Assembly (NCBI RefSeq): GCF_032062105.1
Contig: NW_026920225.1
Location: 1 to 64,000 of the forward strand
Direction: 5' to 3'
Source: Saccostrea cucullata
Lineage: Eukaryota
DNA: 64,000 nucleotides
How positions within the stretch are numbered: position 1 is the first letter of the stretch; each line of letters begins with the position of its first letter. Made by a program: the position numbers and the translations under genes. Shown here one piece after another: positions 31,829-35,008 of the stretch. The notes beneath the pieces were generated by a model. That model saw nothing but the letters and a program-made list of their open reading frames with translations, searched no databases and was not told the DNA's origin.

Positions 31829-32034
31829 GTCTGCACTGTTTTAAAAACACACTTAATTGTAGCAAAATTTTCGACCTTACTCTTTCCAATCAAATTGAAT
31901 TTATGAACTCTTATCAAACATTCTTTGTCATTTGAAAAGTAAACCATACCACAATATACAATTTTCTATTGTATTTTCAGTCCATTATAAAAAAAGTTTT
32001 GTTGATTGATCAAAGAGAGCACTGCTGTTAAATA

Positions 32035-34257
32035 ATGGAGTTCAGAGGTCAAATGTTAATGCTGGTTGTCCTGGTAATGTCCATCTCCCACATCCAGGCC
32101 AACAACAATGACACATCTAACACAACCAGTAAGTAGACATCCATCACAACCAGTAAGTAGACACATCCAACACAAATAGTAAGTAGACACATCCATCACA
32201 ACCAGTAAGTAGACACATCTAACACAACCAGTAAGTAGACACATCCAACACAAATAGTAAGTAGACACATCCAACACAAACAATAAGTAGACATCCAACA
32301 CAACCAGTAAGAAAACATCCAACACAAGTAGTAAGTAGACATCCAACACAACCAATAAGTAGACACCCAACACAACCAGTAAGTATACACATCCAACACA
32401 ACCAATAAGTAGACACCCAACACAACCAGTAAGTATACACATCCAACACAACCAGTGAGTAGACATCCATCACAACCAGTAAGTAGGCACCACAACCAGT
32501 AAGTTGACACATCCATCACAACCAGTAAGTTGACACATCCACCACAACCAATGAGTAGACATCCAACACAACCAGTAAGTTGACACATCCACCACAACCA
32601 ATGAGAAGACATCCATCACAACCAGTAAGTATACACATCCATCACAACCAGTAAGTAGACATTCAACACAACCAGTAAGTAGGCACCACAACCAGTAAGT
32701 AAACATCCAACACAACCAGTAAGTAGACATATCCATCACAACCAGTCAGTTGGCACATCCATCACAAACAATAAGTAGACATCCAACACAACCAGAAAGT
32801 AGACATCCAACACAACCAGTAAGTAGACACATATAAACAACATAACCACATCAACAGCTGATAAACAACATAAACAAACCAGTAGCTGATAAACAACATA
32901 ACAATTAGCTGATAAACAACATAACCACATCATCAGCTAATAAACAACATAAACACACCATCAGCTGATAAACAACATAACCATTAGCTGATAAACAACA
33001 TAACCATAAATCCAGTAGATAAACAACATAACCACACAAGTAGCTGATAAACAACATAACCACATCATCAGCTGATAAACAACATTTAAAACATTGCTGT
33101 GACGTCATGCCTTTGTTCTTGCAGTCTAAAAATTTACCTGTAGCCGTCCGATAATAATAATTACCAGTCTGATAATATATTATCGGACGGCAATGATAAC
33201 AAAATCGGACAGTATTTAAAAAACAAAAAGAAGAGTGAAATTAAGGTTAAGTATGTCCAGAAACCCCCAATAAAAATGTTAGGAAACAAATTCAGGAAAA
33301 GCAAACGCAAGGAAATTAAATTGCTACAAAATAGCAAATCCATCAAAAAAAAAATCCAAGTTTAAACCTTCCACAAAATTAATACTTTTCACTCTTTAAA
33401 AGAATTTTTGATAAAGCACTTTGAAAAAGCGAATTTAAATCCATTTCTGCAAAATAGTCTGCAAATCTCCTTATTTTATGTTTGTTCCCCGATGGCCACA
33501 CTTTTAAAACCTGAGAATATTTCCATTATCTAAACTAAAACTTCAGGGTAAAAATCTGCATTTTTACTTTCAATGGTGATGGCTATAATATCACCCAAAA
33601 TTATGTCAGTATCAATGTCAATTTATGCACAACATAAAAAAATTGTTTCCCCAAAAAATCTTTCACTACCGGACCCCTGTCCTGCTATACTAAACGACTG
33701 CCATTGAATGAATGAAATGAAACAAGAGTTCACTCACTTTTTTACCGTCTCATTTCTTTTATCTACTTATCAGACGGGTAGAAAACAATGGATGCTTGAA
33801 CTCCTATTGTGTTATTATCGGACTCCTCCAGGTAACTTTTGGACATTTAAATCGCAATGTTTTAAGTAAGATATATGCCTCATACTATTCTATATGTAAA
33901 ATTATCAGACAGTTTTCGGCCCTAACGGGCCTCAAACAGTCTGATAATTTTACATGTAGAACAGTATTCGGCATATATCCATTACATACACACCATCACC
34001 TGATAAGCAAAATAAAAAAATAACCATTAGCTGATAAACAACATAACTGCAGAAATTTTGTTTTTGATCCTTTTAATGTGTAAATAGATAAATCTCCTGG
34101 CAGGAGACAGTAAAATGAAGATACTGAGACTATATTGTGTTTCCTTTCAGTAGTGCCAGATGACCTTGGATCTAATCCACACAATGATGCTTCGTGGACT
34201 ATGGCTGTCTCCGTAACGACATTCCTTTGTGCTGCCCTTTTGATTAAGATATTCTAA
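32035..34257 (+). CDS. Putative 66-aa GPI-anchored glycopeptide precursor (CD24/CD52-like architecture)
   Basis: Exon 31981-32128 (acceptor ttttcag; ATG at 32035; MEFRGQMLMLVVLVMSISHIQA-NNNDTSNTT; donor A|gtaagt, phase 1) joins the exon starting at 34151 (tttcctttcag|TA) in frame: IVPDDLGSNPHNDASWTMAVSVTTFLCAALLIKIF, stop at 34255-34257. AATAAA at 34423. Confidence 0.7.
32110..33085. repeat. Compound minisatellite: 24-26 bp acacatccaacacaaccagtaagtag array (to ~32830), then agctgataaacaacataacc array
   Basis: Directly visible tandem units. The second type reappears at ~33990-34047. Confidence 0.95.
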
Positions 34258-35008
34258 TTTCTTATGAACAATGGCTTCATAATGTACAATATGTCATTAA
34301 GTGCCCTGACCTTTGTTGTCATTTAATTGTCATGTTACTGTCTTTCAATCCCCCATTTTTTTTTTTACTAGAAACAACATCATAAGCCATTCAATAATAT
34401 GCATTTATTAGTTTTTCCTTTAAATAAACTATGTTTAAAATAATATACATGTAATCAACAATGATAATGAAAGTTCTTATGATTCCAGTGTAGTTCATGC
34501 CTTAACCATATTTGCAAGAAAAAAGATATATCATCAACTTTATCAAATGTGAATAATTTTTTCTTGTTACAAATGTTCTTGCATCAAATGCATGTACAGG
34601 CATTATGTTCTGAAATAATATTGTAATGAATGCAATTTCTTGTAGAATACTCAGTAATATGTGAAATTCACTTTCTGTACAAATCTATAATACATGTAAT
34701 CCAATTCCACAATAAAGACATTCCATGAATAATTAGTGTTGTCTTTTTCAATTTTGTGAGGAAAATAATAACATAATGAATATGACATAATGACCACACT
34801 TTCAAAATGTACATTTCTTTCAAACTTTTGAGACACACCATACAAAAGTTTTAACAAAGTTATAACCACTCTTTGTCTCTTCTGTAAAATTGAGCTTTGT
34901 GATGCCAGATAACTCTGACAATACATATGAAATCAATGTGAAGAATGCTGCCTTTAGTTTACTTTGACATTGTTAACTGAATGAACAGTGTCAGGCCAAC
35001 AACCAGTA

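What the first reader, a model, noticed from the sequence alone, without database searches (positions are those of the whole stretch)
31981..34445. Hidden 66-aa GPI-anchored glycopeptide gene with CD24/CD52-like design
Seen: two phase-compatible exons missed by the ORF track encode MEFRGQMLMLVVLVMSISHIQA|NNNDTSNTTIVPDDLGSNPHNDAS|WTMAVSVTTFLCAALLIKIF*. This is a signal peptide, a ~20-24 residue N/S/T/D-rich peptide with two N-glycosylation sequons (NDT, NTT), small residues suited to an omega site (N-D-A-S) and a terminal hydrophobic tail, followed by AATAAA. Established: mammalian CD24 and CD52 are tiny, heavily glycosylated GPI-linked peptides with this layout. Inference: this may be an undescribed molluscan glycan-display surface micro-protein. 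The likeness is architectural; sequence homology is not claimed.
Basis: partly seen in the sequence, partly recalled or inferred. Interest (0 to 1): 0.85.

Follow-up and report, generated by a model that had tools for sequence, protein, structure and literature searches.

The report
Unannotated oyster CD52-like surface glycopeptide gene
Oysters of three genera carry a real but unannotated gene for a tiny protein that is most likely trimmed to a 14-21 residue sugar-bearing peptide tied to the cell surface by a lipid (GPI) anchor, the design of mammalian CD52 and CD24 but with no detectable sequence kinship to them.

Summary
The gene is real. The 66-codon, two-exon reading frame is exactly as described. 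The window is Saccostrea cucullata. A single-copy orthologue lies tail-to-tail with ARL14EP in S. echinata and Ostrea edulis, with the same phase-1 intron. Two Magallana gigas RNA contigs carry the spliced 68-aa frame. No NCBI or UniRef record holds it. The last exon has dN/dS of 0.09-0.14 between genera, and the motif N-x-T-S-N-x-T survives with both x positions changing. The tail fits GPI-signal rules, with two conserved attachment options, N43 or D36. GPI anchoring itself is inferred: no predictor or experiment was available, and the tail is as conserved as the core, so a retained membrane helix remains a rival. Pfam CD24 and CD52 models do not match, so the likeness is architectural. Corrections: the mRNA has an upstream non-coding exon, the polyA site is unproven, and the junction was not displayed for this species. 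The scan had noted the intron minisatellite here, but not this gene on other DNA.

The parts
27478..27642 (+). Probable non-coding first exon (true start not located), with candidate donor TTT|GTAAAC at 27643; it overlaps or abuts the first exon of the divergent Gly-rich gene
   Evidence: Homologous to the first exon of M. gigas transcript L015, which ends at a GTAAAT donor in the M. gigas genome; inferred for this window, no reads laid here
28622..28710 (.). Conserved non-coding element in the 5' intron; in M. angulata it directly follows an alternative first exon used by transcript L019; carries an invariant TTATCA (GATA-type) word
   Evidence: 75-79% identical in S. echinata, O. edulis and M. 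angulata; regulatory role is inference
31981..32128 (+). First coding exon: 54 nt of 5' UTR plus 94 nt of CDS, phase-1 donor
   Evidence: acceptor and donor conserved in the second haplotype and S. echinata
32035..32100 (+). Signal peptide, residues 1-22 (cleavage after Q-A, L-A or E-A inferred)
   Evidence: hydropathy; hydrophobic character kept while the sequence drifts, dN/dS 0.16-0.9 between genera; SignalP not available
32107..32127 (+). Paired N-glycosylation sequons N-x-T-S-N-x-T (N25, N29)
   Evidence: kept in all five sequences with x = D/G/S and T/E/Q
32110..32832 (+). 26-nt minisatellite made of the exon end plus donor (about 29 copies, 20 GTRAGT)
32129..34150 (+). 2022-nt GT-AG phase-1 intron
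   Evidence: same position in four species
34151..34257 (+). Last coding exon: core V33-N43 and C-terminal GPI-type signal; stop TAA
   Evidence: dN/dS 0.09-0.14 between genera, Fisher p <= 1e-4 in all pairs; an RNA-type contig of a relative starts to align exactly at 34151
34162..34164 (+). Omega option D36 (omega+1 L/H, omega+2 G; 30 residues removed; mature peptide 14 aa)
   Evidence: rules from PMC10491789 and PMC2119539
34183..34185 (+). Omega option N43 (omega+1 D/E, omega+2 A; 23 residues removed; mature peptide 21 aa), slightly preferred
   Evidence: N is preferred over D at omega (PMC10491789)
34195..34254 (+). Hydrophobic tail W47-F66, marginally hydrophobic, no cytoplasmic extension
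34258..34445 (+). 3' UTR with AATAAA at 34423 (second AATAAA at 34711; end unproven)
35009..38303 (-). ARL14EP, convergent neighbour used as synteny anchor; the 3' UTRs abut or overlap
   Evidence: M. gigas contig L019 runs through both mRNAs

Best explanation
An oyster gene for a GPI-anchored glycopeptide. Shown: the gene is spliced (non-coding first exon plus two coding exons), encodes a 65-68 aa precursor and is under purifying selection. Inferred from established secretory-pathway rules: the 22-residue signal peptide brings it into the ER, two N-glycans are added on N-x-T-S-N-x-T, and GPI transamidase cuts at N43 (or D36) and replaces the tail with a GPI lipid. That leaves a 14-21 residue unstructured peptide on the outer cell surface, mostly glycan by mass. 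Inferred by analogy only: it works as a glycan-display ligand or raft organiser like CD52/CD24, binding lectin-type partners in cis or trans, and may be shed by phospholipases. The tissue and partner are not known.
For: Layout and splice sites. Synteny and identical intron phase in S. echinata and O. edulis. Spliced frame in two M. gigas RNA contigs from different runs and the genomic acceptor in a third contig. Six of six differences from the second haplotype in the last exon are silent, and 23 of 31 variable columns are third positions. Sequons kept with x free. Omega rules are met by N43 and D36 in all species, and both omega+1 positions vary while both omega+2 positions are invariant, as PMC2119539 predicts. 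The tail is marginally hydrophobic (best 19-mer about +0.4 to +2.5 kcal/mol on a Hessa-type scale recalled from memory) and has no cytosolic segment. The ESM Atlas top hit is CD24 (0.89), with plant AG-peptide AGP40 also listed. AlphaFold gives two terminal helices and a low-confidence coil between them.
Against: No GPI predictor or experiment was run. The tail D44-F66 is as constrained as the core (dN/dS 0.07-0.17 between genera) and more than the signal peptide, whereas PMC10491789 describes GPI signals as low in sequence conservation. With N43 the spacer is not very hydrophilic and the strongly hydrophobic part is only 11 residues. The Atlas score is under 0.9 and recognition is low (1888). 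The junction row was not displayed for Saccostrea reads, and two 2026 RNA runs had about zero to one read on the exons.
Confidence: 0.68

Rival explanations
1. Single-pass type I micro-protein: the tail is not cut but stays as a transmembrane helix (K64 at the cytosolic edge) and binds a transporter or receptor as a small regulatory subunit, with a glycosylated 24-residue ectodomain.
For: Tail strongly conserved, including invariant W47, T54 and C58-A59-A60; W47-F66 is 20 residues long and helical in the model; mean Kyte-Doolittle about 1.7-2.1.
Against: No cytoplasmic tail. Four Ser/Thr residues in the helix and an I-to-N change in O. edulis make it a poor membrane span. Two rule-conforming omega sites are conserved.
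Confidence: 0.2
2. Precursor of a secreted glycopeptide (hormone- or neuropeptide-like) in which the conserved V-P-D-D-x-G-S-N-P-H-N core is the ligand and the anchor is transient or absent.
For: The core is highly conserved at the residue level. Retaining the intron would give a stop 2 codons after the donor in all four genomic copies, hence a soluble 10-11 residue form.
Against: No dibasic or amidation sites; a hydrophobic C-terminus is unusual for a peptide precursor; both spliced transcripts carry the tail.
Confidence: 0.07
3. A true, very distant homologue of CD24 or CD52.
For: Same layout and size; CD24 ranks first by language-model features.
Against: No Pfam CD24 or CD52 match at E <= 10 for the whole M. 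gigas protein or at this locus. CD24 is traced only to amniotes (PMC9680537). No homologue found outside oysters.
Confidence: 0.04
4. Not protein-coding: the conservation reflects the overlapping ARL14EP 3' UTR or a non-coding RNA.
For: Tail-to-tail arrangement; no annotation; low read depth.
Against: Codon-periodic substitution, the frame and stop are kept, other frames mostly carry stops and are less conserved, and ARL14EP coverage in the relative ends near 34444, beyond the CDS.
Confidence: 0.01

Closest known systems
CD52 (CAMPATH-1 antigen, Pfam PF15116)
   Same: [quoted passage not shown] With omega at D36 the oyster peptide would be 14 aa.
   Different: No profile match; two sequons rather than one N-glycan; a residue-conserved acidic/Pro/His core; sialylation, Siglec and HMGB1 binding untested; found only in oysters.
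CD24 (heat-stable antigen, Pfam PF14984)
   Same: Precursor 76-82 aa, mature 27-32 aa, glycosylation sites are the conserved residues (PMC9680537); nearest cluster by ESM features (0.89).
   Different: No profile match; shorter; fewer Ser/Thr O-glycan sites; CD24 is traced to amniotes only.
Plant arabinogalactan peptides (AG peptides, e.g. AGP40, PF28140)
   Same: Small glycan-display peptides, many GPI-anchored (general knowledge; family papers listed); listed at 0.77.
   Different: They carry hydroxyproline O-glycans, not N-glycans; no sequence match.

Membership tests
GPI-anchored proteins | N-terminal ER signal peptide | tested here: met
   Hydrophobic core at residues 8-16 and a small residue at 22 in all five sequences; by hydropathy and conservation, not SignalP
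GPI-anchored proteins | Small omega residue, non-Pro omega+1, small omega+2 | tested here: met
   N43-(D/E)-A and D36-(L/H)-G conserved in all species (rules from PMC10491789, PMC2119539)
GPI-anchored proteins | Hydrophilic spacer of 8-12 residues followed by 15-20 hydrophobic residues at the very C-terminus | tested here: inconclusive
   Fits well for D36 (8 polar plus 20 hydrophobic), less well for N43 (10 mixed plus 11 hydrophobic); no cytosolic tail
GPI-anchored proteins | Actual GPI attachment (PI-PLC release, PIG dependence) or NetGPI/PredGPI score | not testable with these tools
   No predictor or experiment available
CD24 | Match to PF14984 | tested here: not met
CD24 | Short unstructured mature peptide whose conserved residues are glycosylation sites | tested here: met
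   but the core after the sequons is also conserved
CD52 | Match to PF15116 | tested here: not met
CD52 | About 12-residue scaffold with N-glycan and GPI | tested here: inconclusive
   14 or 21 residues depending on omega; two sequons
CD24/CD52 | Sialylated glycans binding Siglec-10/G and HMGB1; immune-cell or sperm expression | not testable with these tools
   Tissue of the runs not given; no glycomics
Plant AG peptides | Ala/Ser/Thr-Pro repeats for hydroxyproline arabinogalactans; PF28140 match | tested here: not met
   No such repeats; no Pfam hit

The most novel reading that the evidence does not exclude
An independently evolved invertebrate counterpart of CD52/CD24: a minimal GPI glycopeptide that marks self and damps haemocyte responses through an inhibitory lectin such as CgSiglec-1 (whose blockade raises phagocytosis and apoptosis; PMC5877582). 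That would be a glycan-based checkpoint built convergently in oysters.
Probability: 0.1. Interest if true: 0.82.

Novelty: new variant of a known kind. Interest (0 to 1): 0.52.

Why it matters
It is a well-supported protein-coding gene missed by the oyster annotations checked (no gene called at the locus in O. edulis or S. echinata, and no NCBI or UniRef sequence), in a heavily studied farmed group. If GPI anchoring holds, the CD24/CD52 design of a near-minimal glycan scaffold on a lipid anchor also arose in a lophotrochozoan, and oysters gain a simple candidate surface marker and lectin ligand that can be tested at once. It also suggests that such micro-genes should be sought systematically in invertebrate genomes. 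The design is known and the function is not shown, which caps the interest.

Tried and rejected
Word-based homologue search with the open frame over the last exon: nothing. With the natural M. gigas protein P0030: only itself. phmmer against 1.84 billion representatives: one real hit, P0030; P0031-P0033 are partial matches to long proteins (P0032, the one read, is repetitive) and were set aside as unrelated. Paralogue searches in the own genome by DNA, protein and profile: only the second haplotype. Metagenome contigs: nothing. Tegillarca granosa ARL14EP locus (10 kb each side) and another bivalve's ARL14EP transcripts: no orthologue by tblastn or HMM; the ad hoc exon scan of the Tegillarca locus gave four hydrophobic frames with no likeness to the gene. 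PDB: no significant match. No fold search, because the model has no globular fold. Literature: no paper on this gene or on the run accessions. Downstream minisatellite donors as real splice sites: rejected for coding because all lie after an in-frame stop. The N run at 28424-28564 was not filled or looked up.

Full report
Observation. The intron opens with a 26-nt minisatellite that repeats the exon end and donor. It holds 20 GTRAGT sites, but only the first is reached before an in-frame stop. Position 31981 is itself an acceptor, kept in the second haplotype and in S. echinata, so the ATG exon is internal.

Organism and copies. The neighbouring ARL14EP matches XP_062583398.1 of Saccostrea cucullata, and the second annotated copy lies on a 17,130-bp contig, the length of G000:C2543. 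C2543 is colinear with window 28-61 kb and is the only other place matching either exon by DNA, protein or profile; I read it as an uncollapsed, quite divergent haplotype. All six differences in the last exon are silent.

Orthologues. Using ARL14EP as anchor, both exons were found on the opposite strand downstream of it in S. echinata (L013) and Ostrea edulis (L012), with GT-AG ends, the same phase, one stop and 65-66 residues. Neither annotation calls a gene there. phmmer with the last exon alone found a 68-aa protein, P0030 (85% identical, E 4e-12), on Logan contig L015. That contig is RNA-derived (poly-T head, four spliced blocks against the M. gigas genome at 98% or more) and carries the junction at the predicted residue. 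A second contig from another run, L019, holds the same spliced frame with another first exon and runs tail-to-tail into the ARL14EP mRNA; a third shows the genomic acceptor. P0030 is a singleton with no NCBI or UniRef member. The divergent Gly-rich neighbour is also conserved, and the first exons of the two genes overlap in M. gigas. Nothing was found outside oysters, but the search there was thin: one Tegillarca locus, a few transcripts, and databases limited to called proteins.

Reads for the window itself. The single read-laying run used runs of a relative about 96% identical in the last exon. One contig of run X1 (depth 7.5) aligns from its letter 31 exactly at 34151, leaving 30 letters that do not fit the intron, and the first coding exon's bin has depth 7.6. 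That is what a spliced RNA gives, but the joint row was among those not displayed and X1 is only guessed to be RNA. Two 2026 oligo-dT runs had about zero to one read on the exons while covering ARL14EP, so expression is low or tissue-restricted.

Selection. Last exon: dN/dS 0.09-0.14 between genera, Fisher p of 1e-4 or less in every pair; variable columns 5/3/23 by codon position; 26 of 33 residues invariant in this frame against 6-21 in the other five, which mostly carry stops. The signal peptide drifts (0.16-0.9 between genera) but stays hydrophobic. The motif N-x-T-S-N-x-T is kept with both x positions changing, the pattern expected if the glycans rather than the residues matter.

Mechanism. 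Shown: a spliced, selected, single-copy gene. Inferred from established rules: ER entry, cleavage after A22, two N-glycans, and GPI exchange at the C-terminus. The published pattern is a small omega, any omega+1 but proline, a small omega+2, a polar spacer and a terminal hydrophobic stretch (PMC10491789; PMC2119539). Two sites with an adequate tail satisfy it in all species. N43-(D/E)-A gives a 21-residue product. D36-(L/H)-G gives a 14-residue product and fits the spacer rule better. D44 fails in O. edulis (E), A45 has W at omega+2, and S46 is weak. The tail is marginally hydrophobic on a scale recalled from memory and has no cytosolic part. AlphaFold on P0030 alone gives two terminal helices and a low-confidence coil (pLDDT 67, pTM 0.37). 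The main doubt is that the tail is as conserved as the core (0.07-0.17), more than is usual for a discarded signal, so a retained membrane helix keeps about 0.2. What the peptide does is inferred only by analogy: glycan display for lectin-type partners, as for CD52 and CD24 (PMC6065011; PMC5186806). An inhibitory oyster siglec has been described (PMC5877582), which makes the idea testable, but nothing here links the two.

Comparison. It works like CD52/CD24 in layout, and the ESM Atlas ranks CD24 first (0.89, 164 shared features, below the tool's thresholds). It is not a member: PF14984 and PF15116 match neither the whole M. gigas protein nor this locus, and CD24 is traced only to amniotes (PMC9680537). 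I found no paper on the gene, within a library that lacks most subscription journals.

Limits and rules followed. SignalP and NetGPI were not available. The window's spliced model was searched exon by exon by reference and the joined search was left out; whole-protein searches used the database protein P0030. The N run at 28424-28564 was not filled or looked up.

Verdict. A real, unannotated, oyster-conserved micro-protein gene (about 0.99). Most likely a GPI-anchored N-glycopeptide (0.68), convergent on the CD52/CD24 design. New variant of a known kind; interest 0.52.

Noticed in passing
window 32110-32832; G000:C2543 about 11930-15500; L012 22387-22808: The same 5' splice site was amplified into a minisatellite in two lineages with different units: 26 nt in S. 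cucullata (20 GTRAGT sites in the intron here, 77 in the other haplotype) and 53-65 nt in O. edulis (8), while S. echinata has a single donor. A further A/C-rich repeat follows in all three species.
   Followed up: partly
window 24262-27450 (-) and 27478-27642 (+); L015, L016: Head-to-head neighbour: a secreted Gly/Met-rich protein ending in an Arg run (M. gigas XP_011449600, no Pfam family). Its first exon overlaps the glycopeptide gene's first exon in M. gigas, and the pair is kept in S. echinata.
   Followed up: partly
window 28622-28710: About 80-nt non-coding element conserved in three oyster genera, just downstream of an alternative first exon in M. angulata, with an invariant TTATCA word.
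   Followed up: partly
window 35009-38303 (-) and 47962-49053 (+); L018: ARL14EP is head-to-head with an ankyrin/SOCS-box gene in all three genera; one M. gigas-type RNA contig joins the two.
   Followed up: partly
G000:C2543 versus window 28000-61000: The second haplotype-like contig is only about 80-92% identical; silent divergence in the last exon is 0.24 against 0.37 to S. echinata, high for alleles and perhaps a sign of cryptic lineages in the assembly.
   Followed up: no
window 29209-31831: Stretch largely missing from the second haplotype and covered at very high depth by repeat-derived reads: transposon insertions in the 5' intron.
   Followed up: no
window 32129-32137: An in-frame stop lies two codons into the intron in all four genomic copies, so intron retention or use of a repeat donor would give a tail-less product or trigger decay; this may simply follow from the donor consensus.
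   Followed up: no
window 55581-56813 (-); 1651-2623; 51953-53365: Reverse-transcriptase (LINE-type) fragment and 166-bp satellite arrays; ordinary oyster repeats.
   Followed up: no
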